Shown here one piece after another: positions 44,611-57,264 of a stretch of 64,000 nt of DNA. The translations under genes and the position numbers were made by a program. Each line of letters begins with the position of its first letter. Position 1 is the first letter of the stretch. Below the pieces are notes generated by a model. The model saw only the letters and a list, made by a program, of their open reading frames with translations, ran no database searches and was not told where the DNA came from. Location: the IMG/VR virus record IMGVR_UViG_3300043449_002710, positions 62,001-126,000 of that record. One strand, 5' to 3'.

Positions 44611-45435
44611 TTGGGGAGGCTTACCCTTATGGATTTACTCAAGAAAATGACCGAATTTTTCTCGGGTCTTTATCTGCAAGCAATCACCAAGCAAGAACCC
44701 GCGAGGCCAAATCCTGAAGTCACCCTCTCGGCTATTAGGGAAGCCATCGATCCCAAAGAAGCCCCTTTAGAAGTGATCGCTCAACCCCCAGTAGCTGAAG
44801 TCACAAAGCTCACCAATTTACCCGAACAAGTCTTGTGGTGCCCTTTTGCGGTGAAACGTAAAGAAGCGATGACCACTCGCGGCAAGTACAGAAAGGGCTA
44901 CCCTGAAGGGGCAATCGTTCACTTTACGAGCGGCTCATCGGCTGAAAGTTCCTTTCAGCATGGGTTGAGATCGGGGTATTGTTTTTTTGTCATTCATGAG
45001 GATGGAACGATCTGGCAATCTTTTCCATTAGACTCTTGGGGTTATCATGCGGGCGAATCCTTCCACCCTAAATTAGGCAACGGGGTATCTCGTTATCTAG
45101 TTGGGATTGAAATTTCAAATGCTGGGGTTTTGACAAAAAAACCAGACGGTACTTTTGAAACTTGGTTCGGAAGATTGATCCCATCTTCTCAGGTCAGGCA
45201 TATCCCTAAAAAAATGGAAAACATGCAGCCTGGATATTATGCAAGATACACAGAGAACCAAGAGCAGAGTTTAAGAAAATTGGTTCAATGGCTAAAGATG
45301 AACCACCCCACGGTTTTTGATTACTCTTTGGTTCTTGGGCACGATGAGGTTGCGCCACAAAGGAAATCAGATCCCGGTGGGGCTTTATCCGTCACCATGG
45401 TTGACTTCAGGGATTCTTTGAAAAAGAGCGTCTAA
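44611..45435 (+). CDS. N-acetylmuramoyl-L-alanine amidase (Amidase_2), probable endolysin
   Basis: IVHFT, FVI..DGTI.Q......YHAG, VGIE, LGH.EVAP.RK.DPG Zn-amidase motifs; likely start ATG 44629. Confidence 0.88.
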   Translation: MGRLTLMDLLKKMTEFFSGLYLQAITKQEPARPNPEVTLSAIREAIDPKEAPLEVIAQPPVAEVTKLTNLPEQVLWCPFAVKRKEAMTTRGKYRKGYPEGAIVHFTSGSSAESSFQHGLRSGYCFFVIHEDGTIWQSFPLDSWGYHAGESFHPKLGNGVSRYLVGIEISNAGVLTKKPDGTFETWFGRLIPSSQVRHIPKKMENMQPGYYARYTENQEQSLRKLVQWLKMNHPTVFDYSLVLGHDEVAPQRKSDPGGALSVTMVDFRDSLKKSV

Positions 45436-45854: not shown

Positions 45855-47519
45855 GTGGGGATGAGGCATAACCAAAAATACACAACTGAACAGATCAATA
45901 CCTTGATCTTAGCTCGGGGTTATTTGGTTGACCCGGAATTTGTGTGGTTGGGAGCTAACAAAAGCGATATTTCTTTTTTTTGTCCCCGCCATGGCAAGAG
46001 GACTACACATTGGTCCAATTTCCGAAAAGGAAAAAGTTGTAAGTTGTGCGCTAGCGAGCAACAAGCTCAGAAAAAAATCAGTAAAATCGATTGGCCTACC
46101 CGGGTTAACGAACTTTTAAATGAAAGAAATTTTAGCCTGCTAGAAAGACCTGAAACACTTTATTCTTTCGCTAAAATAAAAGTACGCTGTAATGTGGATC
46201 AGCACGAGTGGTGGACTTGCTACAACCACCTAAAAGCGCACAAAAAAGGTTGTTTGGTTTGCGCGGGTTTATTGAAAACTTCTTTTACCGAGGTTAAAAA
46301 GAAACTGCAGGAAGAAGAGTTTAAAGTTACTGGGGATCTTCTTCCTATTACTTTCAACAGCCAAACTCCAATAGAAGTGATTTGTCCCCAAGGGCACGCT
46401 ACAACCACCAATGCAAACAAAGTGCAGCGAGGTTATGGCTGCAAATATTGCGCTGAAAAAGCACTCACCCAAGAAGAGGTCATACAACGCCTTAAAACAC
46501 GTGGGTTCACAAGCACGGATTCGTACAAAGGAGTGCATACTCCAATGCACTTAGTTTGCGAAAATGGGCACGATGTTTTTAAGTCCTACATGGCGATATG
46601 GCATGATGAAACTCAGTGCTCCTCTTGTCGTCCCCCTTATTCATCTAAGCCGGAAGAAGAAATTTCCTCTTGGCTGAAGACTCTCCTCCCAGAAAACGAT
46701 ATTTTAAGAAGCGATCGGATTCTTTTGGATGGGAATGAAGTGGACATTTACATTCCTTCCAAAAAGCTGGGGATTGAATTCAATGGTCTTTATTTTCATA
46801 CAGAAATTGCCTTGATGCGATCGGGGCGCACACTTCTGGAAGCTCAAGCTTACCATCAGAGTAAAACGGTTCGTGCGGCCCAAAAAGGGGTTCAGCTCAT
46901 CACCCTATGGGATTTCGAATGGGAGATGCGGCAGCAGGCTGTGAAAACAAGATTGAAATCTCTGTTGGGCCTAAATTCATTTAGAGTGGGTGCAAGAAAG
47001 ACCACACTCAGGTCTTTGAATAAAAATGAGTGGAGAACAGTTCGGGATTTCCTAAACACTTACCACATTCAAGGCTCAGCTTCTTTTAAGTATGCTTACG
47101 GGCTTTTTTTAAAAGACGAGTTGGTCAGCGTCATGACTTTTCAAAATCACCACAGACAAAACGTGGATAGAGGCACTTTGGTTTTGAATCGTTATTGTGT
47201 GAAAGAAGACTTTTCTATTAGTGGAGGAGCTACAAAACTCTTTCAATATGCACACAAAGAACTGTCATGCCCCATCTTGAGTTATTCTGACAATCGTTGG
47301 TCCACGGGTGATGTGTATGAAAAATTGGGATTTACTGCCATCAAAAGATCCAGGCCTGATTATTTTTACTCTTTTAGGGGGAAGGGACCTTTTTCGAAGC
47401 AGTCATTAAAGAAAACGCCCGAAGAAAGAAAGTCTGATAAAACAGAACGGGATTTGCGATTGGAACAGGATTACCAGCGGGTTTGGGACTGCGGAAAGAT
47501 CACTTGGCTTTATAAATAA
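45855..47519 (+). CDS. putative free-standing homing endonuclease (Hef-like): Zn-ribbon repeats + PD-(D/E)XK + GNAT-like domain
   Basis: Four C..GH...C..C repeats; S.PE.EI, EVDIYIPSKKLGIEFNGLYFH; C-terminal YSDNRWS.G.VY..LGF..PDY...DCG. Confidence 0.75.
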   Translation: MGMRHNQKYTTEQINTLILARGYLVDPEFVWLGANKSDISFFCPRHGKRTTHWSNFRKGKSCKLCASEQQAQKKISKIDWPTRVNELLNERNFSLLERPETLYSFAKIKVRCNVDQHEWWTCYNHLKAHKKGCLVCAGLLKTSFTEVKKKLQEEEFKVTGDLLPITFNSQTPIEVICPQGHATTTNANKVQRGYGCKYCAEKALTQEEVIQRLKTRGFTSTDSYKGVHTPMHLVCENGHDVFKSYMAIWHDETQCSSCRPPYSSKPEEEISSWLKTLLPENDILRSDRILLDGNEVDIYIPSKKLGIEFNGLYFHTEIALMRSGRTLLEAQAYHQSKTVRAAQKGVQLITLWDFEWEMRQQAVKTRLKSLLGLNSFRVGARKTTLRSLNKNEWRTVRDFLNTYHIQGSASFKYAYGLFLKDELVSVMTFQNHHRQNVDRGTLVLNRYCVKEDFSISGGATKLFQYAHKELSCPILSYSDNRWSTGDVYEKLGFTAIKRSRPDYFYSFRGKGPFSKQSLKKTPEERKSDKTERDLRLEQDYQRVWDCGKITWLYK

Positions 47520-47549
47520 AAAAGGAGGGGAGTTTCCTCCCCTCCTTTT
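47520..47549. terminator. bidirectional Rho-independent terminator
   Basis: AAAAGGAGGGGAG-TTTC-CTCCCCTCCTTTT perfect inverted repeat between convergent genes. Confidence 0.9.
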
Positions 47550-47562
47550 AATGCTAAGCGTC

Positions 47563-50535
47563 TTACTTCAAAGCTACGCCGGTTGAGAAGTCATTGCTGT
47601 TCAGAGCATAAAGTCCGAACAAGCGCTTGATGACGTTTCTCGAATACCAAGCATAGTTGAAGTAAAAGAGAGTCGGATCGTTCTTGTCTTGGAAGACAAT
47701 GATGTCCTTGGTCGGATCGAAGTTTCTGTCGTTTCCATCGGCGTCTTGATACTGCCCGATGAGACCGCGAGCCAGAAGACCCCTTAAGATCGAAGCCAAT
47801 TTGCCACGGACAATCGATTTGGCAGCCGTTCCAGAAGCCGGGGTGATGCCCACCAAAGAGGCCATTTCTCTCACCACAACTTTCGTGACAAAATGCCGCT
47901 GAGTCATGACCTGGATCAGGTTGAAGTCCTTGGCGGTATCGACCGTCATGTCTTCACCCCAAGTGTAAACGCCAGGGCTGCCATTGACGTAGTTGATCTG
48001 AGCTTGACCGAGAAGCATGATCTGATCTTTCCGATACATCTCAATCGTGTCAAAGCCGTTGACCAACTGACCTAAGAGGTCTGTAGCAGGGTCAGCGAAA
48101 CTTGCCACCCGAGCCGCACCCGCGAGAGCCACAAACGAACCGTCCAAAGTCACGGTCGTTGTCAGGCCGTTGTCGAGCACGATGGTCTTGGTAGCACGAG
48201 TCGGGGCCACCAAGATTCGAGAGCCGTGAGCAGCCGAATCGCCTGCCACCTGAAGGGTTTTGCGGGCTGTGAAGACCAGAGTGCCTTCGGTATTTTCGTC
48301 TCCGATCGGAGTGCCAATCGGCATACCGAACCAGACCAGATTCGGACGCTGTTCGAATGGATCGTTTCCAATCAGATTCTGATTGAGAACTTCAGACAGA
48401 GCCGCAGGGTAATTCAATAAGCACAGATCCGTAATCCGAGGATAGTTCTTGACCGATTGAACAGCGGCCACGAAATCGGGAATCGAGTACACACCAGAGC
48501 CATCTGTATTCTTAGGTTGAATCAGATAGACGCCTGGGGCGTTGTTGTTCCAAGCAATTTCGTTGCCGATATACAGGTCATTGTCCACAGCAGAAGGAGC
48601 CGCAAAATTACGACCGTCTTCCAAGCGGAGGACCAGATACGGGGTGTTGTAGAAAGACTCTGGACGTAAGAACAGAGTCGTCAGGTAATAAGCCTGACCT
48701 GGATCTGGCTCAGCGCCTTTGGAGGTGTAGGTCACTTTAACTGCAACAGCCGGATCTACTGTGAAGTAGACAAACGGAGTTCCAAACACCCAGTTGAAGC
48801 TGATCTCAGCGTTCGTGTTGTAATTCTTCACACGAATCGAATCATGGTCGGTCGGAACTTTGGAGAGGATCAAATAGCGTTGACCGGCTACTCCTGTGAT
48901 CTGACCGTTCATATCCGTCTTGTAATCGGTGAGCTGACGGATATCTTCAGTCTTGGCTTTCAAAGACCAATCCAAAACGTTGGAAATGAAGATCGCGTAC
49001 TCGAAGATATCGAGGGTAGCGTAGCTTTCCGTGTTTCTGAAAGCAATCGAGACGTTGTCTGGGAGCAAAGCGTAACCGTCTTTGCCAGCAACCAACGGAT
49101 CAAATTCAGCCGTGAAAGTTCCGAAGCGTCCTTCGGTGGTGCTTGTGGAGAAGCCACCGAACAAAGTGACTGCGTCACCCGCCACAATCGGAGCTTGCAG
49201 AGTGAGTTTGTACTCGCGAGCGTCTTTGGCTGTGTAGTAGATGCGAGGAGCCTTGGCGACGATCTCCCAGGTTGTTCCCACAGCAGCAGCCGTAGGGCCA
49301 ATCACGAAATCCAGCTTCACGCCGTCTACCAGTGTAGGCGAAAGGGAAACGAGGTTGTTTTCAGTGACGGTGAAAGAACCCGAGATCGGAAGAACGTCCC
49401 CGTAACGAGCCCAAACAAATTGCATCACCCGAGCCGGGGTCACGCCCGATACGCTCATGAGCTTGATGCGGTATTTGTTGTTCCGAGCGTGGGTGTAAAG
49501 AGCTTCAGGGTTGATCTGGATTCTGAAGTCGTTCTGAAAGCCACCGACGACATAAGGGGTTTCAATGGTGGCGAACTGAGCATTGCCGTAGCGGCTGTCG
49601 ATTTCGACCATGCCTGGGCCGTGCGCTGTTACAACAAACGAGTCACCTGCGACAAAGTTTGCACCGTTGAAATTGAAATCCAAAGCTAAGCCAAATTCCA
49701 AAGCCCCTGACAGCGAACCCGTTTCATTGATGGTGAAAGTCGGGAAAGTGTCGAGTGCAGCAAGCGGAACCGGAGGAGCGGCATAGTTACCACCCGAAAG
49801 GGGTGTTGCAGTCCAGTGGAAAGTAGCGGTACGAGAACCCACAGCGCCCGAAGCGCTTGTGCAGGTCACCGTGTATTTTCTAGAATAAGCGTGAACAAAG
49901 CTTGCTGTTGGAGAAACCAGAGCAGAGCCTGTGGAGCCCGGCTGCAAAGTCGCGGCCACGGTTCCGAAGTAAGCTGCCGGATGTACGTTGGCGGCGTCCG
50001 CAGTCACTGGGCTGAAAGAAGCCGGGACAAAGTAATCTTTGTATTCTGTGTATTGGCTTGAATCCAACTGATTGCCAATGAACCGGATCTGACGGATCTC
50101 AGAAACCGGGATCGGGTCCTGAACCGCACGATCATTCGATTGGTAATCGAGGTAGTAGGTCGCCAATGCGTCAAACGACTCATCTCGAATCTGAATCGAG
50201 AGGTATTTGCCGCCTGTTGAAAGATACTGCCACTCTTCTTGGCGAAGCTCGGTGCCGTCTTGTTTGAACAAGCGGTTGGGCTTCAGCTTTGCGCCTGTGG
50301 CTTCGTGGAGCAGCAGAGCGACATAAGGGGCGGAGTTAGAAAACGTCAACTGCTCGCCTTGGATGAAGGCCCTGATGATCGGGCTGTTTTTAGCTACAGC
50401 TAAACGAGATCCCTTGGCGATGATGGCCGGGATACGGGCATCAGCGGAAAGATTCGTGCTTTCAGGGTTCAGAATCTGCCCCACATAAGCGCCCGGTTCA
50501 GTGTAACGGGATGTTGTTAATGTCAAATTAGCCAT
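47563..50535 (-). CDS. tail sheath protein
   Basis: EPGAYVGQI N-terminus; C-terminal DGSFVA.A.AA, L....V.GF, GV..WGED.T, IQVM...FV...R sheath domain; 990 aa. Confidence 0.88.
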   Translation of the reverse strand: MANLTLTTSRYTEPGAYVGQILNPESTNLSADARIPAIIAKGSRLAVAKNSPIIRAFIQGEQLTFSNSAPYVALLLHEATGAKLKPNRLFKQDGTELRQEEWQYLSTGGKYLSIQIRDESFDALATYYLDYQSNDRAVQDPIPVSEIRQIRFIGNQLDSSQYTEYKDYFVPASFSPVTADAANVHPAAYFGTVAATLQPGSTGSALVSPTASFVHAYSRKYTVTCTSASGAVGSRTATFHWTATPLSGGNYAAPPVPLAALDTFPTFTINETGSLSGALEFGLALDFNFNGANFVAGDSFVVTAHGPGMVEIDSRYGNAQFATIETPYVVGGFQNDFRIQINPEALYTHARNNKYRIKLMSVSGVTPARVMQFVWARYGDVLPISGSFTVTENNLVSLSPTLVDGVKLDFVIGPTAAAVGTTWEIVAKAPRIYYTAKDAREYKLTLQAPIVAGDAVTLFGGFSTSTTEGRFGTFTAEFDPLVAGKDGYALLPDNVSIAFRNTESYATLDIFEYAIFISNVLDWSLKAKTEDIRQLTDYKTDMNGQITGVAGQRYLILSKVPTDHDSIRVKNYNTNAEISFNWVFGTPFVYFTVDPAVAVKVTYTSKGAEPDPGQAYYLTTLFLRPESFYNTPYLVLRLEDGRNFAAPSAVDNDLYIGNEIAWNNNAPGVYLIQPKNTDGSGVYSIPDFVAAVQSVKNYPRITDLCLLNYPAALSEVLNQNLIGNDPFEQRPNLVWFGMPIGTPIGDENTEGTLVFTARKTLQVAGDSAAHGSRILVAPTRATKTIVLDNGLTTTVTLDGSFVALAGAARVASFADPATDLLGQLVNGFDTIEMYRKDQIMLLGQAQINYVNGSPGVYTWGEDMTVDTAKDFNLIQVMTQRHFVTKVVVREMASLVGITPASGTAAKSIVRGKLASILRGLLARGLIGQYQDADGNDRNFDPTKDIIVFQDKNDPTLFYFNYAWYSRNVIKRLFGLYALNSNDFSTGVALK

Positions 50536-52066: not shown

Positions 52067-53115
52067 TTAAAGATTGTAGGTACTCATGAGAGAAGCTTCG
52101 ATCGATGCACGATCAGTATCTCCCAGTGCTTTATTATAAATACGGAATTCGCAGATCTTGGCATTTAACCGATCCTGATCTGTAAAACCTCTTTGCCCGA
52201 TAGCTGTTTGACCTATGCCATTAGATGGCATGGGGAAACCGGCTCCTTGCAGAGCTTTCAAATCATAGCTTGCCCAACTGCTAACTGTGTATCTCAATGT
52301 TCCATTTTTATACACTTTGAGAGAATTTGAACTTTGGACGATTGAGACTAGAGAGTTTCCAGACCAGTTTGAAAAGCTGTCCACAGGATCAAGACTAGCT
52401 GGTTCAGTTTGTGAGTAAGACATCTGCTTAACAGCATAAACATCAGTAGTAATTGGACAGATCGGCGACCAGGAAAGCCCCAAAGAATTGGTAGAATGAC
52501 CAATCAGATCTTGGTAGTATTCCGAAGAAACCCAGTCAGCCACAACAGCAAAAATTGTAGCTTCAGAACTAGAAAACATCGAGGCCGAGCCAATCGCGTT
52601 TGGAAACACGAGACCGCCAGAACCAAATACCATTCCAGGATATCCATTCAAACTTGTAGCCGTGGTAATTGTTCCATCAACAGTCGGAGTTTGAATCGGG
52701 GAGTCTGACACCATATTCAGGATTGTAAGCCGTGAGCATTGAAGCTGGGATAGTATAGACGCCATTGTCGTAAGAGGTTCCAGTAATCTGATAAACTAGA
52801 CCCGATAAATCGATGCCATCTGTCATTATCGACAAGAAGCACTTTTTCTACAATCCAGGCATCTTTGGCAGAAGAAGAAAATACAATACTCGAAATTGGA
52901 TTGTTCTGCGAGTAATCAAATTTGAAAACTTTCGTTTGTCTTCCTGTTATAGACGCATAATGAACAAATACCGATTTAATATCGTTGTTGGATAAAGAAT
53001 TATCTCCCGTTTGAGATACGTAGTTCGCTAAGATAGTGGGGATTTGATTTTTGTTTAAAAAAACTGGGACGGAAGCTCCTTTCGAAGGAGCTGTAGGGAA
53101 ATTTAATAGATTCAT
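52067..53115 (-). pseudogene. family X copy 3, apparently split by frameshifts; C-terminal LamG-like domain
   Basis: N-domain homologous to 39515/40255 ends abruptly at LVDND (~52822); protein-like sequence continues in a second frame (52826-52677), then in ORF 52765-52067 (LNGYPGMVF, ICEFRIYNKAL...R..IE..L). Confidence 0.55.
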
Positions 53116-53130
53116 TTTTCTTTTCCATTC

Positions 53131-53163
53131 AAAAAAAGTGGCGCAAATTAGAATTTGCGCCAC
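53131..53163 (-). terminator. Rho-independent terminator after tail tube gene
   Basis: GTGGCGCAAATT / AATTTGCGCCAC 12-bp stem then 7 U on the minus strand. Confidence 0.85.
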
Positions 53164-53819: not shown

Positions 53820-55583
53820 ATGTTATTTGAAGATGCTTTAAGAGTTGCAAAAACTGCTGGATTGAAAGTTCTAGAAACTGGGCTTGTCAATTCTGCAAAA
53901 AGACAACTGATCGATGTTGTCTGTAAGGCTGGGCACTCACGTAGAATGCCTCGCAATAAATTCAGCAACAGACCCCCTCAAAATTGTCCTGTTTGTTTAA
54001 AAGAACAAGGCCCTGATCTGGATAAAATTCTAACTGATCCTAAAATCAAAACTAGGTTAGATGAGGGGTATCATCTCAAAAAAGCTTTTTCCGAAGATCA
54101 TGAAATCCAGTTAGAAGTTGTCTGCCCACAAGGTCACACCTATTCTATTGCTAAATGGAAATTTACTAAAGGGACTCAATGCGGCTCTTGCTCAGGTAAG
54201 AATCGGGACCTTACTTTTTTTAACATCAAGCAAGAAATGGAAGCCGAGGGTTTTGAAGTTTTATCGAAGGAATATCAAAATCAGTATCAAAAGCTCCATC
54301 TGATTGACCCTGACGGTAACGAACAATGGATCTCGGCAGATTCTTGGAAACGCGGTTATAGGTCAGAGCGAGGACCGACTCAGCAGACTAGAGACCGCAC
54401 AATCGAAGAAGTAAAAAAAGATTTTGAAGCCGAAGGCTATCAGCTTTTGGAAACCAAATTTATCAATGTTAAAACTAAAATGAGAGCAGTATGCCCTAAA
54501 GGGCATGAGTTTCGAGTGCATTGGAATCATTGGAAAGATGCTGGCGTTAGGTGCTCGGTTTGTTTTGGCACCCCTATGATGACTTTAAAAGAAATTCAAG
54601 AGCATCCAGAAACTATCCAATCTGGTTACCAAGCCTTACGCCGAGAGCGGATTGGTGCTCGTTTGGGTTGCGTTTTTTTATGTCCAAAAGGTCATGAATG
54701 GACTTCCACTCTCCCAGATTTTTTTTCAAAAAAATACCGATGTTCCTCTTGTAACCCGAAGTCTAGCTTGGCGGAATTGGAATTCCTAGAAGAAGTGAAG
54801 AAAACATATCCATCGGCAAGAAAAAGTTTGGATTTCGGTTTTGAAATCGACATCTACATTCCCGAGTTAAAATTAGGAATTGAGTATTGTGGTCTTTATT
54901 GGCATTGCGAAAAAGAAAAACAACCTAATGCACATAAGGACAAGTTTTTAAAAGCTCAAAAAAATGGAATCAAGCTGTTGACCATTTTTGAAGACGAGTG
55001 GTTTTATAAAAAAGAAATTGTCTTGCGAAGAATCTTGAGATCCAAAAAGATCTCGGCTCGCGAAACTCAATTCAAAGAGATATCTAAAGTGGAGGCAGAT
55101 AAATTTTTTGAGGAGAATCATCTTCAAGGAAAATCAGCTACTACAACAAAACAGCATTTTGGTCTTTTTTATCTAGGGTCTTTAGTTGGTGCTATTGCGT
55201 ATGGACCCCACCATAGAAAGGATACGGGAGAATGGGTGCTAAGCCGACTTTGTTTTGGAGAATTTGATATTGTCGGGGGTACGGAAAAGTTATTCAAAAA
55301 CAGTCTGCGTTATTTACCTAAAGTCAAACTAATCTCATGGTCCGACAACAGGTATTCTAACGGGTCAGTCTATGCGAGACTAGGTTTTATCAAAGAGGAG
55401 GATTTAGGTCCCGATTACTCTTATGTGAAACCTGGGCATTCCCCAATTCGGGTTTCCAAGCAATCCATGAAAAAAACCAAAGAAGAGCAAGCATCAGGGA
55501 AAACCGAGCACGAACTCCGATTAGCGCAGGATTGGTACAGGATCTACGACTGCGGCAAAATCCGGTGGGCTTACCCACGCTGA
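53820..55583 (+). CDS. putative free-standing homing endonuclease (Hef-like), paralogue of 45855..47519
   Basis: Four intact and one degenerate CP.GH...C..C repeats; SLAE.E, FEIDIYIPELKLGIEYCGLYWH; SWSDNRYS.GSVY..LGF..PDY...YDCG. Confidence 0.75.
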   Translation: MLFEDALRVAKTAGLKVLETGLVNSAKRQLIDVVCKAGHSRRMPRNKFSNRPPQNCPVCLKEQGPDLDKILTDPKIKTRLDEGYHLKKAFSEDHEIQLEVVCPQGHTYSIAKWKFTKGTQCGSCSGKNRDLTFFNIKQEMEAEGFEVLSKEYQNQYQKLHLIDPDGNEQWISADSWKRGYRSERGPTQQTRDRTIEEVKKDFEAEGYQLLETKFINVKTKMRAVCPKGHEFRVHWNHWKDAGVRCSVCFGTPMMTLKEIQEHPETIQSGYQALRRERIGARLGCVFLCPKGHEWTSTLPDFFSKKYRCSSCNPKSSLAELEFLEEVKKTYPSARKSLDFGFEIDIYIPELKLGIEYCGLYWHCEKEKQPNAHKDKFLKAQKNGIKLLTIFEDEWFYKKEIVLRRILRSKKISARETQFKEISKVEADKFFEENHLQGKSATTTKQHFGLFYLGSLVGAIAYGPHHRKDTGEWVLSRLCFGEFDIVGGTEKLFKNSLRYLPKVKLISWSDNRYSNGSVYARLGFIKEEDLGPDYSYVKPGHSPIRVSKQSMKKTKEEQASGKTEHELRLAQDWYRIYDCGKIRWAYPR

Positions 55584-56202: not shown

Positions 56203-57264
56203 ATGTCCAAAATTCAAAACGAAGACATTAAAAGCGTGGCCGAGCTTACTCTTCAAGGGTTGACCGAATCGAGTCTGCCGCACGATGATAAAGTCTTTTT
56301 GACAGCCAATTCACTCAACAAAACTTTATACCAAGCCATCGTGGATGGTGACCTATCGGGGGCAGCGAGCGGAGAGATGAGAAAAGCGCAATACTTTACG
56401 TCGAGCGGAAATTTCACGGTCCCTTCCAATGTCTACGTGGTCTATGTCACGGCCTGGGGCGGCGGGGGTGGTGGGGGCGGGGGCGGAACCTATTCCACGA
56501 ACTCGGGCGGTGGGGGCACGGGTGGAGGCGGGGGCTATTTTATCTATGACCGTTCGGTTTCAGTTACCCCAGCCGAAGTAATTGCAGTCACTATCGGGGG
56601 CGGCGGGGCCGGGGGTTCTTCTAGTGCAGATGGTTCCTCAGGCGGAAATACCTTGTTTGGTTCTTATTTGACGGTTCGAGGGGGCGGTAGCGGTTCCGCA
56701 GGGTCTAATGGAAACGTGAGTAATGCCGCAGGCGGGAGTTTTGTAAAACTCGGAATCACCGCAGGCGGAGGTGGTGGAAGTGGCTACACTGGCCCAGGGG
56801 GTGCGTCTTTAGGAAATTTGGGGGGAACTTCTGTCAACGGCTATGCAGGTTTTGGCGTGGACGGTGGTAGTGGATTGGGCGGCAAACAAGGCCCTGGGGG
56901 CCTTGGGGGTATCTCCTATTCGAGCACGACTAGGAAAGGTTCTGGCGGGGGCGGGGGTGCATCCGGTAGTGGGGGCGGTGCAGGGGGAAGCCTAGAGATC
57001 AATGAAATCGGAATCTGTGGGATCGGCGGGACGGGCGGAACCGGCGGCAATCTAGCCAACGCTTACTGTGGCGGGGGCGGGGGCGGCGGGGCCGGATTCA
57101 ATGGGGATGGCGCAAACGGAGGCTCCTCTGCCGCAGGGAGTTCAGCCTTAAGCAACAGCGGCGCAGGCGGAGGCGGTGGAGCGGGCGGGATCTCCACGAG
57201 TGTGAATGGATATTCAGGGGGCGCAGGCGGATCTGGCGGGTTGATTGTCTATTGGTTTGAGTAA
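56203..57264 (+). CDS. glycine-rich domain virion/fibre-like protein
   Basis: FTSSGNFTVP..V..VYVTAWGGGGGGGGG ... GGAGGSGGLIVY, the phage glycine-rich domain. Confidence 0.75.
   Translation: MSKIQNEDIKSVAELTLQGLTESSLPHDDKVFLTANSLNKTLYQAIVDGDLSGAASGEMRKAQYFTSSGNFTVPSNVYVVYVTAWGGGGGGGGGGTYSTNSGGGGTGGGGGYFIYDRSVSVTPAEVIAVTIGGGGAGGSSSADGSSGGNTLFGSYLTVRGGGSGSAGSNGNVSNAAGGSFVKLGITAGGGGGSGYTGPGGASLGNLGGTSVNGYAGFGVDGGSGLGGKQGPGGLGGISYSSTTRKGSGGGGGASGSGGGAGGSLEINEIGICGIGGTGGTGGNLANAYCGGGGGGGAGFNGDGANGGSSAAGSSALSNSGAGGGGGAGGISTSVNGYSGGAGGSGGLIVYWFE

What the first reader, a model, noticed from the sequence alone, without database searches (positions are those of the whole stretch)
46950..47519. C-terminal GNAT/Mom-like domain fused to the nuclease: possible self-protecting nuclease-modifier
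Seen in both paralogues (also ~55060-55583): FL..YH.QG...YGLF..DELV.V.TF...L.R.C...GG..KLF...SYSDNR.S.G.VY..LGF. This has the layout of an acyltransferase (GNAT) fold and recalls phage Mu Mom DNA-modifying enzymes. Inference: a single polypeptide with DNA-reading Zn ribbons, a nuclease and a DNA- or protein-acylating domain could act as a one-gene restriction-modification-like selfish element rather than a simple homing endonuclease.
Basis: inference. Interest (0 to 1): 0.6.

Follow-up and report, generated by a model that had tools for sequence, protein, structure and literature searches.

The report
Mom-like GNAT domain on Hef-type endonucleases
Two genes of an uncultivated freshwater jumbo phage encode Hef-type homing-endonuclease-like proteins whose last ~190 residues really are a GNAT acyltransferase domain related to phage Mu's DNA-modifying enzyme Mom; the fusion is a known, already-predicted kind, but whether the domain modifies DNA has still never been tested.

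Summary
Window 46950-47519 (ORF A, 45855-47519) and 55041-55583 (ORF B, 53820-55583) encode paralogous domains. They fold with very high confidence as a GNAT (pLDDT 95.8). The best Foldseek match is the Mu Mom crystal structure, and profile-profile comparison with the Mom family gives 98.7% probability. Upstream lie four Zn ribbons and a Vsr-like 'EDxHD' nuclease related to I-Bth0305I.

The whole protein belongs to the widespread 'Hef-like homing endonuclease' family (343 phage records).

New here:
- The GNAT is the most conserved domain among syntenic orthologues and is under purifying selection.
- It is predicted to form one rigid unit with the nuclease (pTM 0.90).
- A third gene just outside the window fuses a canonical Mom domain to a GIY-YIG nuclease.

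Against straightforward Mom chemistry, several Mom-invariant residues are replaced. The Ser that is essential in Mom is Thr in ORF A, Glu in ORF B and variable across the family, while a canonical CoA-type Gly-Gly-Ala loop is kept. Catalysis on DNA is plausible but unproven.

Verdict: a new member of a known kind, of moderate interest.

The parts
45855..47519 (+). ORF A: Hef-type endonuclease-like protein. 554 aa from the GTG at 45855; the database form begins at the ATG at 45861 (552 aa).
   Evidence: phrog_559 matches full length at E 1.8e-100.
45855..46640 (+). ORF A N-terminal array of four Cys/His Zn-ribbon units (residues 43-65, 111-136, 177-199, 235-258) with helical linkers. Presumed DNA-reading module and the fastest-evolving part.
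   Evidence: Motif scan. Precomputed PF05265 and PF14311 hits on relatives. 40-45% identity between orthologues.
46641..46949 (+). ORF A Vsr-like 'EDxHD' nuclease domain. Family-invariant D297 (46743-46745) and H315 (46797-46799); near-invariant E295 and E308.
   Evidence: Profile A3 hits 3r3p (I-Bth0305I) at E 1.9e-8. Invariants. PF18741 hit on ORF B.
46950..47519 (+). ORF A C-terminal Mom-like GNAT domain (residues 366-554, plus the stop): the finding itself. Key residues: H404 (47064), R446 (47190), G457-G458-A459-T460 (47223-47234), D479 (47289), R481 (47295), Y488 (47316).
53820..55583 (+). ORF B: paralogous Hef-type protein, 587 aa. Four Zn ribbons (residues 35-59, 102-124, 225-248, 288-311), a nuclease domain (about residues 313-407) and a GNAT domain (about residues 408-587).
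55041..55583 (+). ORF B Mom-like GNAT domain. Glu stands at the position of Mom S124; the His, Arg, Asp-x-Arg and Tyr are kept.
   Evidence: PF25680 gives 24.8 bits alone and 28.7 bits summed in frame. Residue table.
47520..47562 (.). G+C-rich hairpin flanked by A and T runs, between the convergent stops of ORF A and the 990-aa gene. Looks like a two-way intrinsic terminator.
   Evidence: Read directly from the sequence. Not tested further.

Best explanation
ORF A and ORF B are free-standing Hef-type homing-endonuclease-like proteins built from three modules. The first is a fast-evolving array of four Zn ribbons that reads DNA. The second is a Vsr-like EDxHD nuclease that cuts it. The third is a C-terminal GNAT domain that is a divergent sister of the Mu Mom family. 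These points are shown: the fold, the homology and the architecture.

Inferred: the GNAT is an active acyltransferase packed rigidly against the nuclease. It acylates a base, most likely an adenine positioned by the Mom-specific Arg, in or beside the site that the shared Zn ribbons recognise. The resident genome would then become refractory to its own nuclease while unmodified DNA of co-infecting relatives is cut. This is the logic of single-chain Type IIG restriction-modification enzymes applied to a homing or exclusion element.

The donor is probably not used exactly as in Mom. The family keeps a canonical CoA-type Gly-Gly-Ala loop and the GNAT catalytic Tyr and Asp, but does not require the Ser that Mom needs. 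Acyl-CoA therefore looks at least as likely a donor as aminoacyl-tRNA.
For: Fold and kinship:
- AF2 pLDDT 95.8.
- Foldseek rank 1 is Mu Mom 8bv8.
- By VIA, Mom scores Z 12.5 with the longest alignment, 140 residues.
- hhalign of the family profile against a Mom alignment: 98.7%, E 1.9e-16, 174 columns including the insertion between strands 6 and 7.
- Pfam Mom and phrog_1384 are the only specific family hits.

Active-site-like residues across 71 homologues:
- H404, R446, G457 and Y488 are invariant, and D479 is kept in 68 of 71.
- R446 aligns with Mom R111. That residue is essential, is conserved in Mom homologues but not in GNATs generally, and is placed at the adenine cleft (PMC7261163; PMC13219725).

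Selection:
- Among syntenic orthologues the GNAT is the most conserved module (56-60% identity, against 40-45% for the Zn ribbons).
- Non-synonymous difference (pN) is 0.134 with synonymous sites saturated, as constrained as the neighbouring 990-aa structural-module gene at 0.158.

Coupling to nucleases:
- The two-domain model has pTM 0.90.
- Nuclease plus GNAT is the constant core, while the N-terminal DNA-binding modules are swapped between Zn ribbons and HTH.
- The same phage carries a canonical Mom domain fused to a GIY-YIG nuclease, with two full-length metagenomic relatives.

The nuclease is the EDxHD homing type (PMC3239194).
Against: - No biochemical or modification data exist for any member, as far as the held literature shows.
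- The Ser equivalent to Mom S124 (S124A is inactive) is Thr in ORF A and Glu in ORF B. It is not Ser in 21 of 71 relatives, and it is Lys in ORF A's nearest kin.
- Mom-invariant Y59, N121 and E123 are Ile/Leu, Gly and Ala here.
- The R151 equivalent is kept in only 47 of 71.
- Neither ORF reaches Pfam's Mom cut-off as a whole protein.
- Silva et al. report that simple N6-acyl adenines are unstable (PMC13219725), so an acetyl-type mark on adenine might not persist.
- Homing endonucleases generally do not need a modifier.
Confidence: 0.42

Rival explanations
1. The GNAT domain is a non-catalytic, exapted DNA-binding or base-flipping module. It helps the nuclease recognise or distort its target and transfers no acyl group.
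For: The Ser essential in Mom is dispensable in this family (S, T, K, E, G, Q or N). Mom-invariant Y59, N121 and E123 are lost. The invariant Arg, His and Tyr could equally hold a flipped base. The rigid packing on the nuclease fits a recognition role. Homing endonucleases commonly recruit assorted DNA-binding modules (PMC3239194).
Against: A Gly-Gly-Ala loop at the GNAT cofactor site is retained (G457 in 71 of 71, G458 in 62 of 71, A459 in 55 of 71). So are the canonical catalytic Tyr (71 of 71) and Asp (68 of 71). This is not expected of a pure binding module over this much divergence. The family profile still hits CoA-using enzymes by sequence (glyphosate N-acetyltransferase, E 3e-5).
Confidence: 0.28
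2. The GNAT is an active acyltransferase whose substrate is not DNA, for example a host or phage protein, a charged tRNA (as in TacT/AtaT toxins) or a small molecule. The fusion to the nuclease then reflects a combined attack on the host or a competitor.
For: Most GNATs, including the top VIA matches (RimI, Naa10/50), acylate proteins or small amines. Donors and substrates of GNATs cannot be predicted from structure (stated in PMC13219725).
Against: The specific kinship is to Mom, the only GNAT known to act on DNA, including the Mom-specific Arg. The domain is always tied to DNA-binding and DNA-cutting modules.
Confidence: 0.15
3. Genome-wide restriction-modification reading (Iyer et al. 2021). 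The Mom domain broadly modifies the phage's adenines against host restriction, and the nuclease degrades host or superinfecting DNA with little site specificity.
For: Stated prediction in PMC7824862. Mu Mom itself protects against many restriction enzymes (PMC7261163).
Against: Four Zn ribbons, or HTH arrays in relatives, argue for long specific sites. The family prototype is reported as site-specific (PMC2988022). Two to eleven diverged copies per genome fit many specificities rather than one global mark.
Confidence: 0.12

Closest known systems
Hef-type ('Hef-like') free-standing homing endonucleases of phages: phrog_559 and phrog_3339 (for example Pseudomonas phage PA5oct, Campylobacter phages, Acinetobacter T4-like phages, Caulobacter Cr30)
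   Same: Full-length match, 5-553 of a 607-position profile, E 1.8e-100. The C-terminal domain is found in 343 phage records, mostly annotated as Hef-like or homing endonuclease. Same nuclease-plus-GNAT core with variable N-terminal DNA-binding modules.
   Different: At most 40% identical to any isolate-phage copy in the C-terminal domain. The nearest kin are metagenomic (52-61%). I could not check whether the experimentally studied U5 Hef itself carries the GNAT domain, because the paper and sequence are not held.
Phage Mu Mom (PDB 8bv8; Pfam PF25680), the glycyl-tRNA-dependent adenine N6 modifier
   Same: GNAT fold with an insertion between strands 6 and 7. The equivalents of H58, R111, D149, R151 and Y159 are kept in both window copies. 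Best Foldseek match.
   Different: 15-18% identity. Y59, N121 and E123 are replaced. S124 is Thr in ORF A and Glu in ORF B. The Mom loop is replaced by a canonical Gly-Gly-Ala loop. The domain is fused to a nuclease and Zn ribbons, whereas Mom stands alone and forms dimers. Scores fall below Pfam's cut-off.
I-Bth0305I, prototype of the EDxHD (Vsr-like) homing endonucleases (PDB 3r3p)
   Same: Nuclease-domain profile match at E 1.9e-8 over about 98 positions, with the catalytic Asp and His columns invariant. Taylor et al. already placed Hef-type enzymes in this family (PMC3239194).
   Different: I-Bth0305I is intron-encoded, uses NUMOD/HTH modules for binding and has no GNAT domain.
Mom-REase fusions of jumbo phages, predicted to be restriction-modification-like (Iyer, Anantharaman, Krishnan, Burroughs, Aravind 2021, PMC7824862)
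   Same: Their 'five momylating enzymes' of PA5oct correspond to five matches in that genome; the best of them is annotated as a Hef-like homing endonuclease.
   Different: That paper does not mention homing at all and assumed acyl-CoA chemistry. It reports no experimental test.
Type IIG/IIL single-chain restriction-modification enzymes (analogy of logic only; from general knowledge)
   Same: One polypeptide with a shared recognition module, a nuclease and a modifying domain.
   Different: Those use SAM-dependent methyltransferase domains and PD-(D/E)XK nucleases of other lineages. No homology is claimed or tested.

Membership tests
GNAT superfamily | The mixed alpha/beta GNAT fold (strands 1-7 with helices 1-4) | tested here: met
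   AF2 pLDDT 95.8. 230 PDB chains at Z of 8 or more, with the top Z 12-14 all GNATs. 292 Foldseek hits at E of 0.001 or better; all of those listed are Mom or other GNAT acetyltransferases.
GNAT superfamily | Cofactor loop between strand 4 and helix 3 (Q/R-x-x-G-x-G/A) and a catalytic Tyr in helix 4 | tested here: met
   G457 in 71 of 71, G458 in 62 of 71, A459 in 55 of 71, Y488 in 71 of 71. The first position is not Q or R. Binding of CoA itself was not tested.
Mom family (PF25680) | Score above Pfam's gathering cut-off (27.1 bits) | tested here: inconclusive
   ORF A: no hit. ORF B: 24.8 bits as a protein, and 26.3 bits, or 28.7 with neighbouring pieces in frame, in the genome scan. Many relatives carry precomputed PF25680 hits. 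Profile-profile comparison gives 98.7%.
Mom family (PF25680) | Mom-specific Arg on strand 4 (R111), essential and absent from other GNATs | tested here: met
   R446 is invariant in 71 of 71 and aligned to R111 by MAFFT and hhalign. Its role is taken from PMC7261163 and PMC13219725.
Mom family (PF25680) | Ser at the N-terminus of helix 3 (S124), essential for Mom catalysis | tested here: not met
   Thr in ORF A and Glu in ORF B. Across the family: Ser 50, Gly 6, Glu 5, Thr 3, Lys 3, Gln 3, Asn 1 of 71.
Mom family (PF25680) | The His-Tyr pair (H58, Y59) and the N121/E123 loop, invariant in nine Mom-family sequences | tested here: not met
   His is kept (71 of 71), but Y59 is Ile/Leu, N121 is Gly and E123 is Ala.
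Mom family (PF25680) | D149, R151 and Y159 equivalents | tested here: met
   D479, R481 and Y488 are present in both window copies. Family frequencies are 68, 47 and 71 of 71.
Mom family (PF25680) | Helical insertion between strands 6 and 7, required for activity in Mom | tested here: inconclusive
   The model has an insertion with three short helices at model residues 150-172, and hhalign aligns through it. No residue-level superposition was possible and there is little sequence similarity.
Mom family (PF25680) | Transfer of glycine from Gly-tRNA to adenine N6 in double-stranded DNA | not testable with these tools
   Needs biochemistry. No reads with modification signal are available; the only holder is the source DNA run.
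Hef-type / EDxHD homing endonucleases | Vsr-like nuclease domain with the conserved acidic and His catalytic residues | tested here: met
   3r3p at E 1.9e-8. D297 and H315 are invariant; E295 and E308 are at least 90% conserved.
Hef-type / EDxHD homing endonucleases | Full-length similarity to the family | tested here: met
   phrog_559 at E 1.8e-100 (ORF A) and 1.1e-93 (ORF B); phrog_3339 at E 2.7e-81 and 1e-69.
Hef-type / EDxHD homing endonucleases | Mobility: sporadic presence or absence at a site among close relatives, and cleavage of the empty site | tested here: not met
   ORF A's orthologues occupy the same locus in all three related contigs whose context could be read (the two unrelated ones, L011 and L022, plus L023, which matches L022 gene for gene), and diverge roughly in step with the neighbouring gene. 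No empty site was found. The sample is small, and cleavage was not tested.
Restriction-modification-like self-protecting element | Modification blocks cleavage by the cognate nuclease | not testable with these tools
Only the architecture and its conservation bear on it.

The most novel reading that the evidence does not exclude
Hef-type endonucleases are single-chain nuclease / DNA-base acyltransferases. A Mom-derived GNAT, steered by the same DNA-reading module as the nuclease, writes a site-specific acyl (or aminoacyl-derived) mark that makes the carrier genome immune to its own endonuclease. This would be a built-in epigenetic immunity for homing and exclusion elements. It would have evolved at least twice, with EDxHD and with GIY-YIG nucleases, both present in this one phage. 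It might also use a donor or chemistry different from Mu Mom's.
Probability: 0.3. Interest if true: 0.7.

Novelty: new member of a known kind. Interest (0 to 1): 0.35.

Why it matters
Hundreds of phage genomes carry from one to about eleven matches to this domain; those listed are mostly annotated as homing endonucleases or hypothetical proteins. A separate line of comparative genomics calls the same genes 'momylating enzymes'. The two views have not been joined or tested.

If the GNAT domain writes a site-specific DNA mark, three things would follow. It would be the first homing or exclusion nuclease with built-in modification immunity. It would widen the chemistry of phage DNA hypermodification beyond Mu Mom. 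And it would offer programmable, Zn-ribbon-guided base acylation.

If the domain turns out to be a binding module, that would be a clear case of an enzyme fold exapted for DNA recognition.

Mom's donor (Gly-tRNA), structure and critical residues were published in 2026, so the question is now directly testable.

Tried and rejected
- Single-sequence searches of the two domains against PDB sequences gave nothing useful. Profiles were needed.
- hhalign of the family profile against Mu Mom alone was only 60% probable and shifted the His column. It was superseded by the comparison with a nine-sequence Mom alignment.
- The search for related loci with alignment A1 failed for lack of a conserved stretch. 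Single-protein scans of viral contigs gave only 7 loci.
- Scans with the neighbouring 990-aa and 173-aa proteins found no relatives, so synteny came from the look-up of encoding contigs instead.
- A near-identity DNA search of isolate phages found nothing.
- dN/dS could not be computed because synonymous sites are saturated. Only pN and pS are reported.
- Sandegren et al. 2005 and Iyer et al. 2009 are not held, and the supplement of Taylor et al. is not held. I could therefore not verify that U5 Hef carries the GNAT domain. I also could not verify my recollection that Hef cuts its own DNA in vitro, so no weight is put on it.
- Only the source DNA run holds this sequence and there is no RNA.
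- Model coordinates are not exposed. No pocket, electrostatics or residue-level superposition was possible.
- Complex prediction, the search of protein representatives and the atlas searches were not used, because the family was not left open by the cheaper searches.
- Rejected reading 'HNH endonuclease' (the label of phrog_559): no HNH motif or Pfam HNH hit was found, and the nuclease is Vsr-like.
Full report
**1. What is there**

The stated range lies at the 3' end of ORF A (window 45855..47519, + strand). ORF A is 554 aa counted from a GTG; the database copy starts at the ATG at 45861 and has 552 aa. The second copy is the 3' end of ORF B (53820..55583, +, 587 aa).

The two proteins align over 423 residues at 35% identity (E 3e-60). 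The C-terminal domains are 43-45% identical. The window is part of a 223,260-base IMG/VR virus record estimated 81% complete. Its only sequencing-run holder is a freshwater metagenome. No isolate phage is close at the DNA level.

**2. Architecture**

Each protein has four Cys/His Zn-ribbon units in its N-terminal half (weak PF23454 hit; PF05265 and PF14311 on relatives).

A short nuclease domain follows. A 47-sequence profile of the region matches the crystallised catalytic domain of I-Bth0305I (3r3p) at E 1.9e-8. The Asp and His columns are invariant (D297, H315), and E295 and E308 are nearly so. Taylor et al. named this the EDxHD, Vsr-like homing-endonuclease family and already assigned phage Hef-type enzymes to it (PMC3239194).

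The whole proteins match phrog_559 end to end (E 1.8e-100 and 1.1e-93) and phrog_3339, 'homing endonuclease'. The 'HNH' label on phrog_559 is not borne out.

The C-terminal domain alone finds 343 isolate-phage records, up to 11 places per genome. Those listed are mostly annotated as 'Hef-like homing endonuclease' or 'homing endonuclease', several as hypothetical protein, and one as 'putative nuclease/acetyltransferase'.

**3. The C-terminal domain is a GNAT and a relative of Mom**

With a 71-sequence alignment (A2), AlphaFold2 gives pLDDT 95.8 and pTM 0.85.
- Foldseek against the PDB ranks the Mu Mom S124A structure 8bv8 first (E 3.5e-8, TM 0.58-0.60), followed by generic GNATs.
- The Foldseek-independent search gives Z 12-14 for many GNATs. 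Mom scores Z 12.5 with the longest alignment, 140 residues at 18% identity.
- By sequence, the family profile hits glyphosate N-acetyltransferase (E 3e-5) and GCN5.
- Pfam gives Mom at 24.8 bits for ORF B (cut-off 27.1) and only marginal GNAT hits for ORF A.
- phrog_1384, 'Mom-like', covers the whole domain.
- The clearest test is profile against profile. A2 against nine Mom-family proteins including Mu Mom (A4) gives 98.7% probability, E 1.9e-16 and 174 aligned columns, running through the insertion between strands 6 and 7 to the last strand.

**4. Are the catalytic residues kept?**

Mutagenesis of Mom identifies H58, Y59, R111, S124, D149, R151 and Y159 as important. R111 and S124 are essential, and R111 is Mom-specific (PMC7261163, with numbering offset by 10; PMC13219725).

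In the alignment, the correspondences in ORF A numbering are:
- H404 = H58
- I405 = Y59
- R446 = R111
- G457-G458-A459-T460 = N121-S122-E123-S124
- D479 = D149
- R481 = R151
- Y488 = Y159

Across 71 homologues, H404, R446, G457 and Y488 are invariant. D479 is kept in 68 of 71 and R481 in 47 of 71.

The S124 position is Ser in only 50 of 71. It is Thr in ORF A, Glu in ORF B, and Lys in three of ORF A's closest relatives. The Mom-invariant Y59, N121 and E123 are replaced throughout. In their place the family has a Gly-Gly-Ala loop of the kind that binds the CoA pyrophosphate in ordinary GNATs, together with the usual catalytic Tyr.

My reading, which is inference, is that the constellation looks like a working acyltransferase that shares Mom's substrate-positioning Arg but not Mom's exact donor handling.

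**5. Evidence that the domain matters and is coupled to the nuclease**

(a) A model of residues 255-554 (nuclease plus GNAT) has pLDDT 95.6 and pTM 0.90. A pTM that high for two domains indicates a confidently fixed mutual arrangement. I could not inspect PAE or coordinates.

(b) Nuclease plus GNAT is the constant core of the family. The N-terminal modules vary between Zn ribbons, PF24308 and several kinds of HTH. Short forms keep nuclease plus GNAT only.

(c) ORF A has orthologues at the same locus, convergent with a conserved gene of about 990 aa, in three related contigs: L011, L022 and L023 (L023 matches L022 gene for gene).
- Window against L011, identities are 45% (Zn ribbons), 53% (nuclease), 60% (GNAT) and 64% (neighbouring gene).
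- Between L011 and L022, pN is 0.227 (Zn ribbons), 0.139 (nuclease), 0.134 (GNAT) and 0.158 (neighbouring gene), with synonymous sites saturated.
- The GNAT is therefore the best-conserved module and is as constrained as a structural-module gene. A decaying appendage is excluded.

(d) Just outside the window, at G000:C1:128809-130566 (L021:2809..4566, - strand), the same phage encodes a 585-aa protein. It has an N-terminal canonical Mom domain (PF25680, 109.8 bits), a GIY-YIG nuclease domain (31.2 bits) and several HTH repeats.
- None of 323 matching isolate-phage records covers 80% of it.
- Two metagenomic proteins share the full architecture, and a third pairs Mom with another domain.

Mom-type GNATs have thus been joined to two unrelated homing-type nuclease folds, in opposite order, within one genome.

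(e) ORFs A, B and C all have lower third-position G+C (0.42, 0.36, 0.38) than the neighbouring structural genes (0.58-0.60). This is common for mobile endonuclease genes.

**6. What is already known**

Iyer et al. [quoted passage not shown] They also state that PA5oct has 'five momylating enzymes' (PMC7824862).

PA5oct has five matches to the ORF A domain, and the best of them lies in a gene annotated as a Hef-like homing endonuclease. That paper never uses the word homing. The homing-endonuclease literature I could read does not mention the GNAT domain.

Hef of phage U5 is described as a unique endonuclease that cleaves nrdB (PMC2988022, citing Sandegren et al. 2005). The original paper is not held, so I could not confirm that U5 Hef contains the GNAT domain. 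From memory only, and unverified, its abstract says that Hef also cuts its own phage's DNA in vitro. If correct, this would fit a need for protective modification in vivo. I put no weight on it.

The window adds two, or with ORF C three, new and divergent members.

**7. Mechanism, with likelihoods**

Shown: the architecture, the fold, the homology, the purifying selection, and the recurrence of the fusion.

Inferred:
- An active acyltransferase acting on DNA at the site read by the shared Zn ribbons, giving the carrier genome immunity to its own nuclease: about 0.4.
- A non-catalytic DNA-binding or base-flipping module: about 0.3.
- An active enzyme with a non-DNA substrate: about 0.15.
- A genome-wide restriction-modification role as Iyer et al. 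proposed: about 0.1.

The last is a variant of the first; the two differ mainly in site specificity.

Mobility was not demonstrated. No empty site was found, and ORF A looks vertically inherited within its small clade. This fits a domesticated exclusion or competition function as well as it fits homing.

**8. Verdict**

This is a new member of a known kind. Interest is moderate because the biochemical question is open and now directly testable, but the idea and the family are already in the literature.

No alternative genetic code was needed.

Noticed in passing
L021:2809-4566 (- strand) = G000:C1:128809-130566, about 2.8 kb beyond the window's 3' end: A third nuclease-GNAT fusion in the same phage: a 585-aa protein with an N-terminal canonical Mom domain (PF25680, 109.8 bits), a GIY-YIG nuclease domain and several HTH repeats. 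No isolate phage has the full architecture; two metagenomic proteins do.
   Followed up: partly
window 47563-50535 (- strand): A 990-aa protein with no PHROG hit, yet 64% identical to 991-993-aa proteins in related contigs and always convergent with the ORF A orthologue. Probably a major virion-module protein; its function was not determined.
   Followed up: partly
window 47520-47562: A G+C-rich perfect hairpin flanked by A and T runs, between the convergent stops of ORF A and the 990-aa gene. Looks like a bidirectional intrinsic terminator.
   Followed up: no
window 56203-57264 (+ strand): A 353-aa, extremely Gly-rich protein matching tail-fibre and fibre-assembly PHROGs (phrog_863, E 1.4e-18), in a local G+C peak (0.58).
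   Followed up: no
window 44611-45435 (+) compared with L011:6831-7289 and L022:3799-4374: The lysis enzyme upstream of the ORF A locus differs between relatives. It is an amidase/endolysin-type protein in the window (phrog_1794 and phrog_1493) but Peptidase_M15_3 in the related contigs. This is module swapping next to a conserved endonuclease locus.
   Followed up: no
Pseudomonas phage PA5oct MK797984.1 (hit H9, five places): The matches to this domain in PA5oct (the best in a gene annotated 'Hef-like homing endonuclease') appear to be what Iyer et al. 2021 count as 'five momylating enzymes'. The two literatures do not cross-reference each other.
   Followed up: partly
P0012, P0014, P0017 (nearest relatives of ORF A), alignment A2 column of ORF A residue 460: The position of Mom's essential S124 is Lys in three of ORF A's closest relatives, Ser in three others and Thr in ORF A. 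There is rapid turnover at a site that is catalytic in Mom, while neighbouring Gly residues stay fixed.
   Followed up: partly
window 52067-52765 and 52717-53163 (- strand): Two ORFs without family matches overlap by 49 bases in the block between the 990-aa gene and ORF B. Both have low third-position G+C (0.34-0.37), unlike the adjacent 173-aa virion protein (0.60).
   Followed up: no
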